Assembly: GCA_025603075.1 (NCBI GenBank)
Contig: MU626413.1
Coordinates: 1 to 47,256, forward strand
Direction of reading: 5' to 3'
Length of the DNA: 47,256 nucleotides
DNA from: Neoconidiobolus thromboides FSU 785
Taxonomy: Eukaryota > Fungi > Entomophthoromycota
Below the pieces are notes generated by a model. It saw only the letters and a program-made list of their open reading frames with translations, made no database searches and was not told the DNA's origin. The position numbers were made by a program, and so were the translations under genes. Every line of letters begins with the position of its first letter. Within the stretch, counting starts at the first letter, position 1. Shown here piece after piece: positions 12,436 to 46,000 of this stretch.

Positions 12436-16660
<4,225 letters not shown>

Positions 16661-40344: not shown

Positions 40345-41269
40345 ATGTTGTTATATAAAATAGTAGTACTCGGTGATGGTGGTGTTGGGAAGGTAAATTA
40401 ATCGAAATTTGGATTATTAAGATTCTAATTTCTTTTTTATATTATCTTATTTAGACGGCGCTAACGATTCAGGTAACTAATTTTTTAACTCATCTAAGCC
40501 TAGCTTTAACCCTTTTTAATAGCTTTGTTTAAATCATTTCGTCGGTAAGATAATTACAAAATAGCATCAAATTAATTTAACTTGGTTTTATTTATTTAAA
40601 TTATAACTTCCATTACTTTTCTTTAGAGGTAGTTACTCCTTCTTTTTAGGTTTTTTAAGTTATTTACTCATATTGTTTAGACATATGATCCAACGATTGA
40701 AGATTCTTACCGAAAGCAAGTTGTAATTGATGATCAAGCATGTGTATTAGAGGTTTTAGATACTGCCGGACAAGGTAAAATTGAAATTTATGTAGCTCTA
40801 AAATAAACTAACAACTTTAAAGAGGAATATACTGCGTTAAGAGATCAATGGATTAGGTATATAATAGGTTTAGACAAAAAAATAACGAATTAAAATTGAA
40901 ATTAGAGATGGTGAAGGATTTTTGTTAGTATATTCTATCACTTCTCGTTCCACTTTTGAACGAGTAGAACGTTATCATGAACAGATTCTTAGAGTAAAGG
41001 ACAATGAATTTTCACCTATGATTTTGGTTGGTAACAAAGCAGATAAAGCAACTGAAAGGGAAGTAGCACGTGAAGAAGGAGTGACTATGGCAAGACGCTT
41101 AAACTGTGAATTTATAGAATCTAGTGCTAAAGCATGCATCAATGTAGAGATGGCGTTTTATCAAGTAGTACGATTGATAAGAGCGGATCAAGGATTTAAT
41201 GAGCCCCCTAAACGCATAGGGTCGATTAATCGACCTGGTAAAAAGTCACGCAAATGCTTAGCGCTTTAA
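40345..41269 (+). CDS. RAS2: Ras-family GTPase of the fungal Ras2 clade; 7 coding exons including 18-, 22- and 2-nt exons
   Basis: Reconstructed [43 protein letters not shown]...[22 protein letters not shown]...NKAD...ESSAK...CLAL*. LCLNHFVETYDPT and DQWIR mark fungal Ras2. Confidence 0.92.
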
Positions 41270-43083: not shown

Positions 43084-46000
43084 ATGAAAAGGACACGTAA
43101 TTTAAGTAATAAGCCAAAATACTCAGGTTTTTTTTCAGATATAAATGACATATTAGATGGAAAAGAAACAAATAATAATAAAAATAAGAGGAGATCATCA
43201 AAGAGGAAAAAAGGTTTATTTAATGGAGATACTAATGAAGACCAGGAGTTACACGAGTCATCGGATAATTCACTAGATATTAAAGAAGATGAGCCTGAAA
43301 TTGAAGACAAATCAGAATCAGAAGACAGCATTATCTCAATACAAAAAAGTAAAAAGATCCCTGAACCTAAAGATAAAAAACAAAAAAAAAGACATTTAAA
43401 AAATGAAATTAAAGAGCGTGCTATCGATGACATTGATATCAATCAAAAGTTGAGCATTAAAGTCAACGATTTAGTGAGCAACAATACAAAGGCAGGTTCT
43501 AATAAAAAAATAAACAATGCTGGTAATTTTTATTTTAAAATTTAAGTTTATCTTATAAGTTTGAAATAGAAGGAAAGGATGAAGTTATAACTAAACCAAT
43601 TCCTATACCTAGTTATAGACCTTTTGATATTTATAACTACCTTAAATTTGATGATCCAGAACTTGAGGACGGGGATTCAAGGGTTATTTTTGTTAGGCCA
43701 AAGAATCATTATCTTAGAGCTAACGGTAATTTCCTTTTCTAATTTATTATTTATGTTTAATGTTTCCAGAATTAATTCCTGAGTCTAAGTTAGCAGTAGA
43801 ATATGACCTTGATCTTGAAGGTAATTTATATTGAAATTAAGTTTTTTATATTTTTATATTTTAAAGATAAGGCATGGTTAGAAGTAATTTGTGAAAAATT
43901 AGAAATCAATACTGAGGTTTTAGATATGGAGGAAATATTTGAATTATTCATGGATAGGATTGAAAAAAACTGGTTTATTCATGTAAGCAAGCTAAGCATT
44001 GATATGACAAACAATAACATCCTTTTAGAGTAAACAAACAGAAAAACAAAATAAATTTCGAACTAGTGAGCTTAATCCAGATACTCCTTGTGAGATTTGT
44101 AAAGAAACTGATTGCGAAAATAGCAACGCTATAATATTCTGTGATGGTTGTGATTTAGCTGTACATCAGGGTACTTATCTTTGTTTTTATAACCTTAATA
44201 CTAATATTCAGATTGTTATGGTGTACCTTACATACCTGAAGGACAATGGCTTTGTAGAAAATGTATAGTTTCTCCTTCCAACCCAGTGGTAATGTTTTTT
44301 AGTTTTTTAAATAGCTGTATTAATAAGAAGACCTGTATTCTTTGCCCTAATGAAGGAGGGGCATTTAAACAAACTGGATTAAATTCTTGGGCTCATGTTT
44401 TATGCGCCATATGGATCCCAGAAGTTTCTTTTGGCAGCAGCGTATACATTGAACCAATCGAAGGTGTCGACACTATTCCCAAAAGTCGATGGAAATTGGT
44501 ATTTTTTTAATTACTATTTTTTTCACAACTAAGTTTTTAGATATGCTATCTGTGTAAACAACGTAAAGGAGCATGTGTGCAATGTTCAGTAAAATCTTGC
44601 TCTGCTTCTTTTCATGTGACATGTGCTTTTTTTGCAAAGTTTACTATGAAATATAAAGTTATGCCAGACTCACTTTCAACAAAACCCTATTGCCATAGAC
44701 ATGTCTCTGTAAGTGCTGTTCGTGTGGTTTGTAATAATATTTAACTTTTCAAAATAGAAAGATAATAAAGACCAAGCTGATATTCAAGAAGTACAAGGGT
44801 ATTTTGCCAAAAAATTCAGTCCTAAGAAAGTTCATAAGAAAGACTCTAAATATGGTAGTTACTTTGTTAAAATAAATATTTGTTTATATTGAATTAAATT
44901 TAAGCAGCAGTATTCAAAACTTCAAGCTCTAAAGCTGCTATTGCTCACCAACAAGCAATTGATCCAAGTCCTGAAATAATATCCATGGACGTATTTCATC
45001 ATATTATCAGTACTGAAACAGAAGTAAAGACTCGAAAAAAAAATCAAATTTTATTAGAAATTTGTAAATATTGGACCCTTAAAAAGGGAGAATATAGGAA
45101 TGTTCCATTTATTAGACGGTTACATTTGGAGGTAGTTTTGATAGTTAGTTATTTAACTTTTATTTAACCTTAAATCAGCCTTGGACAGCTTCTACACCCC
45201 TGCAATCCGAAGAAGAGAAAGTCATTATATACGAAGTAATTATTTATTAATTTAAATTATAAATGATTTAACTTTTAAAGAATTTGGTTAATATTAAAGA
45301 TGGCCTCGAGAAAGTTCAAAAAATTACCTCTTTAATAAGGCAAAGGGAGGCCTACAAGTTAGAGCTGATTAGATATCGATATAATTATTGGGAAAGTTTC
45401 TTATTTCCAATGACAAAATATTTTAGAAGTGTACTCCTAAAACTAATAAGGTAAATTTAGTCTATTTCTAGTAATAATTCTTAACTAATTTTAGTGATGA
45501 TAAAACATTTATATTTACCCAACCCGTGAGTAAAGAACAAGCCCCAGATTATCATAATTACATTAAAAATCCAATGGACTTTGCAACTCTATCCTCTCTT
45601 GTTGATAATCATGAAGTTCGTGACTTGAATACATTTAAAGTAACAGATAATAATTAACTATGTTTCATTTAAACTCATGTTTAGGAAAAACTACTTTTGA
45701 TTTTCTCAAATTGTATGTTCTACAACGATGATAAATCAATCTATTATAAGACAGCTGCCAAATTCAAAAAAAATGCATTGACAATGCTAAGCAACATTCA
45801 AAAAGAAATATCACGCTTAGATATTGATAGTGATACAGGGTTTTTAAATGTTAGGTTTGACACTGAAGCAGCATTTTCAAGCAATAAAATACGTCAAGAT
45901 GAAGAAAGTAATAATGAGCTATCAGAAGAAGACATAGTCATTTCTGGACATGACACTCCTAACTTTAAAGAAACTGATAACGACATATTATATTCTCTTG

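What the first reader, a model, noticed from the sequence alone, without database searches (positions are those of the whole stretch)
40545..40680. Apparently obligatory 2-nucleotide micro-exon (AG, 40627-40628) in Ras switch-I
Seen: exon ...TTC GTC G | GTAAGA...CTTTAG | AG | GTAGTT...TGTTTAG | ACA TAT GAT CCA. Including the 2 nt gives G+AG = Glu and the conserved [15 protein letters not shown]. Skipping gives GAC ATA TGA, an immediate stop. The second intron is 52 nt (typical here), and the GTAGTT donor is also used in PRP16 (12800) and the NTO1-like gene (~45131). Two-nt exons are near the minimum possible and are missed by gene predictors. Skipping could act as an NMD switch on Ras2 dosage (inference).
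Basis: partly seen in the sequence, partly recalled or inferred. Interest (0 to 1): 0.75.

Follow-up and report, generated by a model that had tools for sequence, protein, structure and literature searches.

The report
Ancient two-base exon in fungal Ras2
A Ras2 signalling gene of the fungus Neoconidiobolus thromboides needs a real exon only two bases long (AG), which sits at the same spot in fungi from five phyla and causes many deposited gene models to be wrong there.

Summary
On the + strand the sequence reads TTCGTCG|GTAAGA…CTTTAG|AG|GTAGTT…TGTTTAG|ACATATGAT, with the AG at 40627-40628. Including it gives [16 protein letters not shown]. Skipping it gives LCLNHFVDI-stop.

The window is Neoconidiobolus thromboides FSU 785. 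The gene is a 193-aa Ras2-type GTPase, and the deposited protein already reads FVETYDP.

- **Conservation:** the hexamer AG|AG|GT splits the same codon (G / AG) in genomic DNA of nine other species: Massospora, Entomophthora, two Basidiobolus, Rhizophagus, Phascolomyces, Martensiomyces, Thamnocephalis and the chytrid Rhizophlyctis. The surrounding intron sequence is unalignable. Chance per locus is 0.004-0.07 (computed for the window and eight of the nine).
- **Loss:** Aspergillus and one chytrid lack both introns.
- **Transcript:** an intron-free contig from a Massospora relative carries GTTGAGACA.
- **Misannotation:** about 29 of roughly 95 retrieved homologues are wrong exactly here.

So this is a constitutive, ancient 2-nt exon that must be removed by ordered splicing. 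The kind is known: Coprinopsis has 57 two-nt exons, and 1-nt exons exist in plants and Fusarium. The NMD-switch idea has no evidence.

One conflict is open. A paralogue has TTAG|AT|GTAATT, which predicts Asp, but its deposit says Glu. The scan had also noted that AT exon elsewhere in this genome.

The parts
40345..40392 (+). Exon 1 (48 nt), [17 protein letters not shown]-loop
   Evidence: identical to P0001 residues 1-16
40455..40472 (+). Exon 2 (18 nt), TALTIQ
   Evidence: matches P0001 residues 17-22
40523..40544 (+). Exon 3 (22 nt), LCLNHFV plus G, the first base of codon 30
40545..40626 (+). Intron 3 (82 nt), GTAAGA…pyrimidine-rich tract…CTTTAG, phase 1
   Evidence: the donor G|GTRAGT-like site is conserved in 11 loci
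40627..40628 (+). 2-nt micro-exon AG, bases 2-3 of Glu30 (GAG)
   Evidence: AG|AG|GT is conserved at the same codon in 10 orthologous loci from five phyla
40629..40680 (+). Intron 4 (52 nt), GTAGTT…TGTTTAG, phase 0
40681..40774 (+). Exon 5 (94 nt), [31 protein letters not shown], switch I and the DTAGQ motif
40823..40856 (+). Exon 6 (34 nt), [12 protein letters not shown] region
40906..41269 (+). Exon 7 (364 nt), DGEGF…GNKAD…SAK…KKSRKCLAL plus stop
   Evidence: 100% identity to P0001; Pfam PF00071

Best explanation
The AG at 40627-40628 is a genuine, constitutively included 2-nt exon of a Ras2-type GTPase gene.

**What it encodes.** Codon 30 (GAG, Glu, at the N-terminal edge of switch I) is spread over three exons. 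The G is the last base of the 22-nt exon 3, and the AG is the micro-exon.

**Splice sites.** The two flanking introns (82 and 52 nt) each have canonical GT…AG ends. The AG also supplies positions +1/+2 after the upstream 3' splice site and positions -2/-1 of the downstream 5' splice site.

**How it is spliced (inferred).** A 3' site and a 5' site only 2 nt apart cannot both be occupied by spliceosomal complexes at once, and exon definition is impossible. The introns must therefore be removed one after the other by intron definition. After the first removal the AG is fused to a normal exon, and the second intron is an ordinary intron. The order is unknown.

**Age.** The arrangement is ancient. 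It predates the split of Chytridiomycota from the terrestrial fungal lineages. It was lost, together with both introns, in some lineages (Aspergillus, Fimicolochytrium).

**Shown versus inferred.** Shown: the sequence anatomy, the reading-frame requirement, conservation across five phyla, and the presence of the two bases in a relative's transcript. Inferred: sequential splicing and constitutive inclusion in this species.
For: 1. **Frame.** Only inclusion of 2 nt joins LCLNHFV to TYDPTIED. Skipping gives a stop after two codons.
2. **Deposited protein.** P0001 from this contig is 193 aa and reads LCLNHFVETYDP.
3. **Conservation.** Each of nine orthologous intervals (98-525 nt) has exactly one AGAGGT at the same codon phase. 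Chance by dinucleotide shuffle is 0.004-0.072 each. A tenth locus, the chytrid Rhizophlyctis rosea, shows the same.
4. **Where the conservation sits.** An anchored profile shows information only at Y-tract-YAG|AG|GTA. An unanchored MAFFT alignment finds no other intron conservation.
5. **Transcript.** The intron-free contig L002 (582-nt ORF) reads TTTGTTGAGACATATGAT. When aligned to the Massospora genome, its bases 89-90 fall between exon 3 and exon 5. Three further ~1-kb contigs encode 193-aa proteins with FVETYDP.
6. **Both paralogue clades carry it.** Entomophthora muscae L011 has TTTTAG|AG|GTGAGT.
7. **Intron-less orthologues keep the codon.** They encode the same Val-Glu-Thr contiguously (GAA).
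8. **Typical failures.** Predicted proteins fail at exactly this junction in the ways expected for a missed tiny exon.
9. **Taxonomy.** The species lineages were checked.
Against: No transcript from N. thromboides itself was available. Both P0001 and P0121 are single-member clusters seen only on genomic contigs.

The mRNA of the main gene cannot distinguish a 2-nt exon from an intron that ends 2 nt before its AG, because both give GAG.

The paralogue on contig C239 has TTAG|AT|GTAATT and no AGAGGT, which predicts Asp. Its deposited protein P0121 nevertheless has Glu. If that deposit is transcript-based, this favours a shifted acceptor.

Branch-point-like YTRAY motifs are low-information and absent from some of the introns.
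Confidence: 0.9

Rival explanations
1. There is a single 134-nt non-canonical intron (40545-40678, GT…TT). Its 3' cut falls 2 nt before the terminal AG, so the AG at 40679-40680 stays in the mRNA. The product is identical (G+AG+ACA).
For: It is the only single-intron way to obtain the observed protein (reasoned). The deposited paralogue protein P0121 has Glu although its interval has no AGAGGT, which is what this model predicts.
Against: It gives no reason for AGAGGT to persist at one place in ten otherwise unalignable intervals across five phyla. The would-be terminal dinucleotides are TT, AT, CT or AC with no consistency. No spliceosomal mechanism is known that cuts 2 nt upstream of an AG (established knowledge). 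The interval is about twice the usual intron length of the gene.
Confidence: 0.04
2. The real donor is TTC|GTCGGT (40541) spliced straight to 40681. This gives an in-frame Ras lacking Val29-Glu30, with no micro-exon.
For: It is in frame. Gene predictors chose this solution in Rhizophagus, Martensiomyces, Piromyces and others.
Against: The transcript L002 and the other ~1-kb contigs keep VE. Intron-less orthologues encode VE. The deposited P0001 keeps VE. GTYGGT is a poor donor, while G|GTRAGT two codons on is conserved in all 11 loci.
Confidence: 0.02
3. The frame problem comes from an assembly indel or a decaying pseudogene.
For: None beyond the frame problem itself.
Against: The same architecture appears in independent assemblies of ten species. 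All other exons are intact and highly conserved.
Confidence: 0.01
4. On top of being a real exon, its skipping is used as a regulated, NMD-coupled switch on Ras2 dosage.
For: Skipping creates a stop two codons later. The arrangement has been kept for a very long time although intron loss is possible.
Against: No skipped isoform was seen in any data available here. Every transcript-like contig includes the AG. Retention of old introns needs no regulatory function. The micro-exon's AG gives the downstream donor ideal -2/-1 bases, which argues for efficient inclusion.
Confidence: 0.1

Closest known systems
2-nt exons catalogued in the long-read annotation of Coprinopsis cinerea (PMC12230235)
   Same: Fungal, internal, 2 nt, and flanked by spliceosomal introns. 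Omission usually creates a premature stop. That paper reports 57 such exons in 50 genes.
   Different: That is a genome-wide catalogue in one basidiomycete supported by long reads. Here there is one gene with no reads from the species itself, but the exon is traced across five phyla. Whether Coprinopsis Ras2 carries it was not checked.
1-nt exons of plant APC11 and VPS55 (PMC4674806, PMC8831610)
   Same: An ultra-short constitutive exon is needed for the frame. It is deeply conserved within a kingdom, lost together with its introns in some lineages, and systematically missing from annotations. Sequential intron-definition splicing has been proposed.
   Different: Those are 1 nt rather than 2 nt and in plants. 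They were validated by RT-PCR and reporter mutagenesis, which is lacking here.
1-nt exon of Fusarium CYP621A P450 genes (PMC12940212)
   Same: It is fungal and was found by comparative alignment. The candidate is boxed by AG and GT inside an intron about twice the normal length, and it lies inside a conserved motif.
   Different: It is restricted to one genus and one P450 family. The Ras2 exon spans phyla and sits in a core signalling GTPase.
Recursive splicing at AG|GT ratchet points, and fungal stwintrons (own knowledge; recursive splicing is discussed in PMC4674806)
   Same: Two splicing reactions must occur in order. The first creates or frees the substrate for the second. The upstream intron abuts the exonic part (-2/-1) of the next 5' splice site.
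   Different: A ratchet point leaves zero bases, while here 2 coding bases remain. In a stwintron the inner intron interrupts the GT, AG or branch site of the outer intron. Here both introns have complete canonical ends.

Membership tests
Spliceosomal ultra-micro-exon (3 nt or less) | Canonical AG immediately upstream and GT immediately downstream, each belonging to a complete GT…AG intron | tested here: met
   CTTTAG|AG|GTAGTT; introns 40545-40626 and 40629-40680 both run GT…AG
Spliceosomal ultra-micro-exon (3 nt or less) | Its bases are required to keep the reading frame and a conserved residue | tested here: met
   Inclusion gives FVETYDP and skipping gives a stop. 582 nt equals 193 codons plus a stop.
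Spliceosomal ultra-micro-exon (3 nt or less) | Conserved position and splice signals in orthologues while intron sequence diverges | tested here: met
   10 of 10 orthologous loci that have introns there carry AG|AG|GT. The own paralogue has AG|AT|GT.
Spliceosomal ultra-micro-exon (3 nt or less) | Mature mRNA contains the bases | tested here: inconclusive
   Met for a relative's intron-free contig L002. No transcript of N. thromboides was available, and a GAG mRNA does not by itself locate the source of the AG.
Spliceosomal ultra-micro-exon (3 nt or less) | Junction reads or splicing intermediates that use the internal sites | not testable with these tools
   No read-level RNA-seq access
Ras family small GTPase (Pfam PF00071), fungal Ras2/RasB type | G1-G5 motifs and a C-terminal CaaX box | tested here: met
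   GDGGVGKT, T35 in [22 protein letters not shown] and KCLAL. Precomputed PF00071 on P0001, and the nearest named hits are Ras2.
Zero-nucleotide recursive splice site | AG|GT juxtaposed so that no base is retained | tested here: not met
   Two coding bases lie between the AG and the GT
Stwintron (spliceosomal twin intron) | An inner intron interrupts the donor, acceptor or branch motif of an outer intron | tested here: not met
   Both introns have intact GT and AG ends. The upstream intron lies at -2 of the next donor, in exonic sequence.
NMD-coupled regulated exon skipping | A skipped, PTC-containing isoform exists and responds to conditions or to loss of NMD | not testable with these tools
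   Only the in-silico stop is shown

The most novel reading that the evidence does not exclude
The 2-nt exon is a feature of Ras2 about as old as crown Fungi. On this reading it has been kept in chytrids, Mucoromycota, Zoopagomycota, Kickxellomycota and Entomophthoromycota because ordered splicing, or occasional skipping to a stop codon, tunes Ras2 output. It would then be both the most deeply conserved exon of 2 nt or less described in fungi and a regulatory device in a core growth-signalling gene.
Probability: 0.12. Interest if true: 0.8.

Novelty: new member of a known kind. Interest (0 to 1): 0.55.

Why it matters
- **Limit case of exon recognition.** A 2-nt coding exon has been held in place in a core Ras gene across at least five fungal phyla. 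It offers a natural substrate for studying ordered, intron-defined splicing.
- **Practical effect on annotation.** About a third of the retrieved Ras2 homologues are wrong exactly at this junction. They lack VE, lack LCLNHFVE, lack 14 residues, or read into an intron. Any comparative or structural work on switch I of fungal Ras2 that uses these entries inherits the error.
- **A benchmark and marker.** The conserved G|GT…YAG|AG|GT…YAG|AC signature gives a simple test case for micro-exon-aware gene finders. It also marks intron loss: it is absent in Aspergillus and in one chytrid.

Tried and rejected
- **Branch-point scan (YTRAY within 8-70 nt of each 3' site).** Motifs such as CTAAC lie upstream of the micro-exon in most loci. 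The motif is too weak, and is missing in several introns, so it counts only as mild support.
- **Unanchored MAFFT of the intervals.** The introns do not align. This was useful only to show that nothing but the splice signals is conserved.
- **Literature.** No paper in the held library describes a Ras2 micro-exon. Phrase searches for '2-nt exon' and variants found nothing relevant.
- **Transcripts of N. thromboides.** None are in the protein collection, since P0001 and P0121 are single-member clusters. Direct proof in this species was therefore not possible.
- **Rap-like and other Ras paralogues of the genome.** The Rap-like gene has no intron at this site. Only the two Ras2-type genes do.
- **GTAGTT donor near 45131.** It was not confirmed by a simple open-frame test.
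- **Joined model.** Searches used single exons by reference or deposited proteins. The only joining was a 48-nt junction translation in a script.

Full report
**Observation.** The sequence is as described. On the + strand, exon 3 (40523-40544, CTTTGTTTAAATCATTTCGTCG) is followed by an 82-nt intron (GTAAGA…CTTTAG, 40545-40626). Then come the dinucleotide AG (40627-40628), a 52-nt intron (GTAGTT…TGTTTAG, 40629-40680) and exon 5 (ACATATGAT…, from 40681). Exon-wise translations give [64 protein letters not shown] and DGEGF…KCLAL*. With the AG the seven exons total 582 nt, which is 193 codons plus a stop. A short junction translation shows three outcomes: inclusion gives [16 protein letters not shown], skipping gives LCLNHFVDI*, and the alternative donor TTC|GTCGGT gives [14 protein letters not shown]. 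The other introns of the gene are 62, 50, 48 and 49 nt. AGAGGT appears in only 2.9% of dinucleotide shuffles of the 136-nt interval.

**Identity.** The last exon is 100% identical to a deposited 193-aa protein of Neoconidiobolus thromboides FSU 785 (K502DRAFT_331935, on a 47,256-nt contig). That protein carries Pfam Ras (PF00071), and its nearest named relatives are fungal Ras2 proteins. It reads …LCLNHFVETYDP…. I could not see the CDS coordinates behind it. Residue numbering coincides with H-Ras, so the split codon is Glu30 at the N-terminal edge of switch I (own knowledge of Ras numbering).

**Comparative evidence.** This is the decisive line. I fetched the genomic loci of orthologues whose deposited proteins looked broken or intact at this point. 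The codon is split G / AG by two introns in every case below, with the hexamer AG|AG|GT inside.

| Species | Locus | Micro-exon context |
|---|---|---|
| Massospora cicadina | L001 | TTTAG\|AG\|GTATTC |
| Entomophthora muscae | L011 | TTTTAG\|AG\|GTGAGT |
| Basidiobolus ranarum | L012 | TTCAG\|AG\|GTATTT |
| Basidiobolus meristosporus | L013 | TGCAG\|AG\|GTATGA |
| Rhizophagus irregularis | L014 | TATAG\|AG\|GTATGC |
| Phascolomyces articulosus | L015 | ATTAG\|AG\|GTAAAA |
| Martensiomyces pterosporus | L016 | TGTAG\|AG\|GTAAGA |
| Thamnocephalis sphaerospora | L017 | CACAG\|AG\|GTAAGC |
| Rhizophlyctis rosea (chytrid) | L020 | TTGCAG\|AG\|GTACAA |

NCBI taxonomy places these species in Entomophthoromycota, Mucoromycota, Kickxellomycota, Zoopagomycota and Chytridiomycota. 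Each of the nine intervals tested (98-525 nt, GC 0.21-0.54) contains exactly one AGAGGT, with a shuffle probability of 0.004-0.072. A profile anchored on the micro-exon has information only in the pyrimidine tract and in YAG|AG|GTA. An unanchored MAFFT alignment finds no other conserved intron column. Two orthologues have neither intron and encode Val-Glu-Thr contiguously: Fimicolochytrium jonesii (GTGGAAACC) and Aspergillus versicolor (GTCGAAACA). The simplest history is an origin before chytrids and terrestrial fungi diverged, followed by loss in some lineages.

**Transcript evidence.** A 1,065-nt Logan contig (L002) carries an uninterrupted 582-nt ORF for a 193-aa protein that differs from the Massospora protein at only about ten aligned positions (by eye). 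It reads TTTGTTGAGACATATGAT. When aligned to the Massospora genome, its blocks coincide with the exons, and bases 89-90 (AG) fall between exon 3 and exon 5. Three other ~1-kb contigs encode 193-aa proteins with FVETYDP. No transcript of N. thromboides itself exists in the collection.

**Misannotation.** Of the homologues retrieved through the C-terminal exon, which is unbiased for the N-terminus, about 29 of roughly 95 that span the junction are aberrant exactly here.
- Eight jump from TIQ to TYDP and so lack LCLNHFVE, which is 22+2 nt. Examples are Massospora, Phascolomyces, Rhizopus stolonifer, Geosiphon, B. ranarum and Rhizophlyctis.
- Seven drop only VE. Examples are Rhizophagus DAOM 197198, Martensiomyces and Piromyces.
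- Two skip 14 residues (E. muscae, Umbelopsis).
- Twelve read into an intron or start inside one and end …E|TYDP.

These are the signatures expected when a predictor cannot place a 2-nt exon.

**Rivals.** A single intron ending 2 nt before its AG (GT…TT) would give the same mRNA. That model does not explain the conserved internal hexamer. Its would-be terminal dinucleotides vary (TT, AT, CT, AC), and no such mechanism is known. The Val-Glu-dropping donor is contradicted by the transcripts, the intron-less orthologues and the conserved G|GTRAGT donor. An assembly error is excluded by ten independent assemblies.

**An open conflict.** The genome has a second Ras2-type gene on contig C239. It has the same architecture, but its micro-exon reads TTAG|AT|GTAATT (L009:1470-1471), which predicts Asp30. 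There is no AGAGGT in that interval. Its deposited protein (P0121, K502DRAFT_320639) nevertheless has Glu. With canonical sites Glu is impossible there. It could arise only by keeping the AG of the last acceptor. There are two possibilities: the deposit was built by a procedure that slid the acceptor by 2 nt, or the paralogue's mRNA really reads GAG. The orthologue in E. muscae has AG, so AT is derived. This paralogue is the natural experiment that separates the micro-exon model from the shifted-acceptor model.

**Mechanism.** The anatomy and conservation are shown, and the following is inferred. A 3' and a 5' splice site 2 nt apart cannot be bound at the same time, and exon definition is impossible. 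The two introns must therefore be removed sequentially by intron definition, as proposed for the Arabidopsis 1-nt exon (PMC4674806). Whichever intron goes first, the AG becomes the end or the start of a normal exon. The -3 to -1 context of the downstream donor is GAG both before and after removal of the upstream intron. The upstream donor is close to GTRAGT in all 11 loci. The micro-exon's own donor is more variable at +4 to +6 but always has the ideal exonic AG. The AG is therefore constrained by both coding and splicing. In all 11 loci the upstream intron is at least as long as the downstream one, and the significance of this is unknown. Nothing here supports or excludes regulated skipping.

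**Known comparators and novelty.** Two-nt exons are documented in fungi: Coprinopsis has 57 in 50 genes (PMC12230235). One-nt exons are documented in plants (PMC4674806, PMC8831610) and in Fusarium (PMC12940212). This is therefore a new member of a known kind. I found no description in the held literature of the depth of conservation, the location in Ras2, or the scale of misannotation.

**Limits.** There is no read-level RNA data, and Basidiomycota were not sampled. Only single exons by reference and deposited proteins were searched.

Noticed in passing
G000:C239, L009:1390-1521 (micro-exon at L009:1470-1471): The second Ras2-type gene of this genome has a 2-nt micro-exon AT (TTAG|AT|GTAATT), which predicts Asp30. 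The deposited protein P0121 shows Glu30, which cannot be obtained with canonical splice sites.
   Followed up: partly
L009:1514-1521: In the paralogue, the six bases just before the last acceptor AG are GTTGAT. These are the same as the end of exon 3 (GTTG) plus the micro-exon (AT). It may be coincidence or a trace of past recombination with cDNA.
   Followed up: no
Deposited proteins P0004, P0012, P0022, P0031, P0033, P0034, P0036, P0051, P0055, P0067, P0107, P0124, P0127 and others: Roughly a third of the retrieved fungal Ras2 entries are misannotated exactly at the micro-exon. They lack VE, LCLNHFVE or 14 residues, or they contain intron read-through.
   Followed up: yes
11 loci (window, L001, L009, L011-L017, L020): The intron upstream of the micro-exon is at least as long as the downstream one in every locus: 82/52, 80/50, 89/39, 60/36, 93/69, 87/65, 127/75, 110/93, 374/149, 130/103 and 62/61.
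   Followed up: no
window 40345-40680: Four introns fall within the first 31 codons, giving exons of 48, 18, 22 and 2 nt. The intron after TIQ is also present in Aspergillus versicolor (L019), so at least that position is shared with Dikarya.
   Followed up: partly
G000:C5 (L004): A Rap/Rsr1-like paralogue ([15 protein letters not shown]) has no intron at the corresponding codon.
   Followed up: partly
window 12800-12846: AAG|GTAGTT…AAATAG forms a 47-nt candidate intron that keeps an open frame on both sides. This supports GTAGTT as a working donor in this genome.
   Followed up: partly
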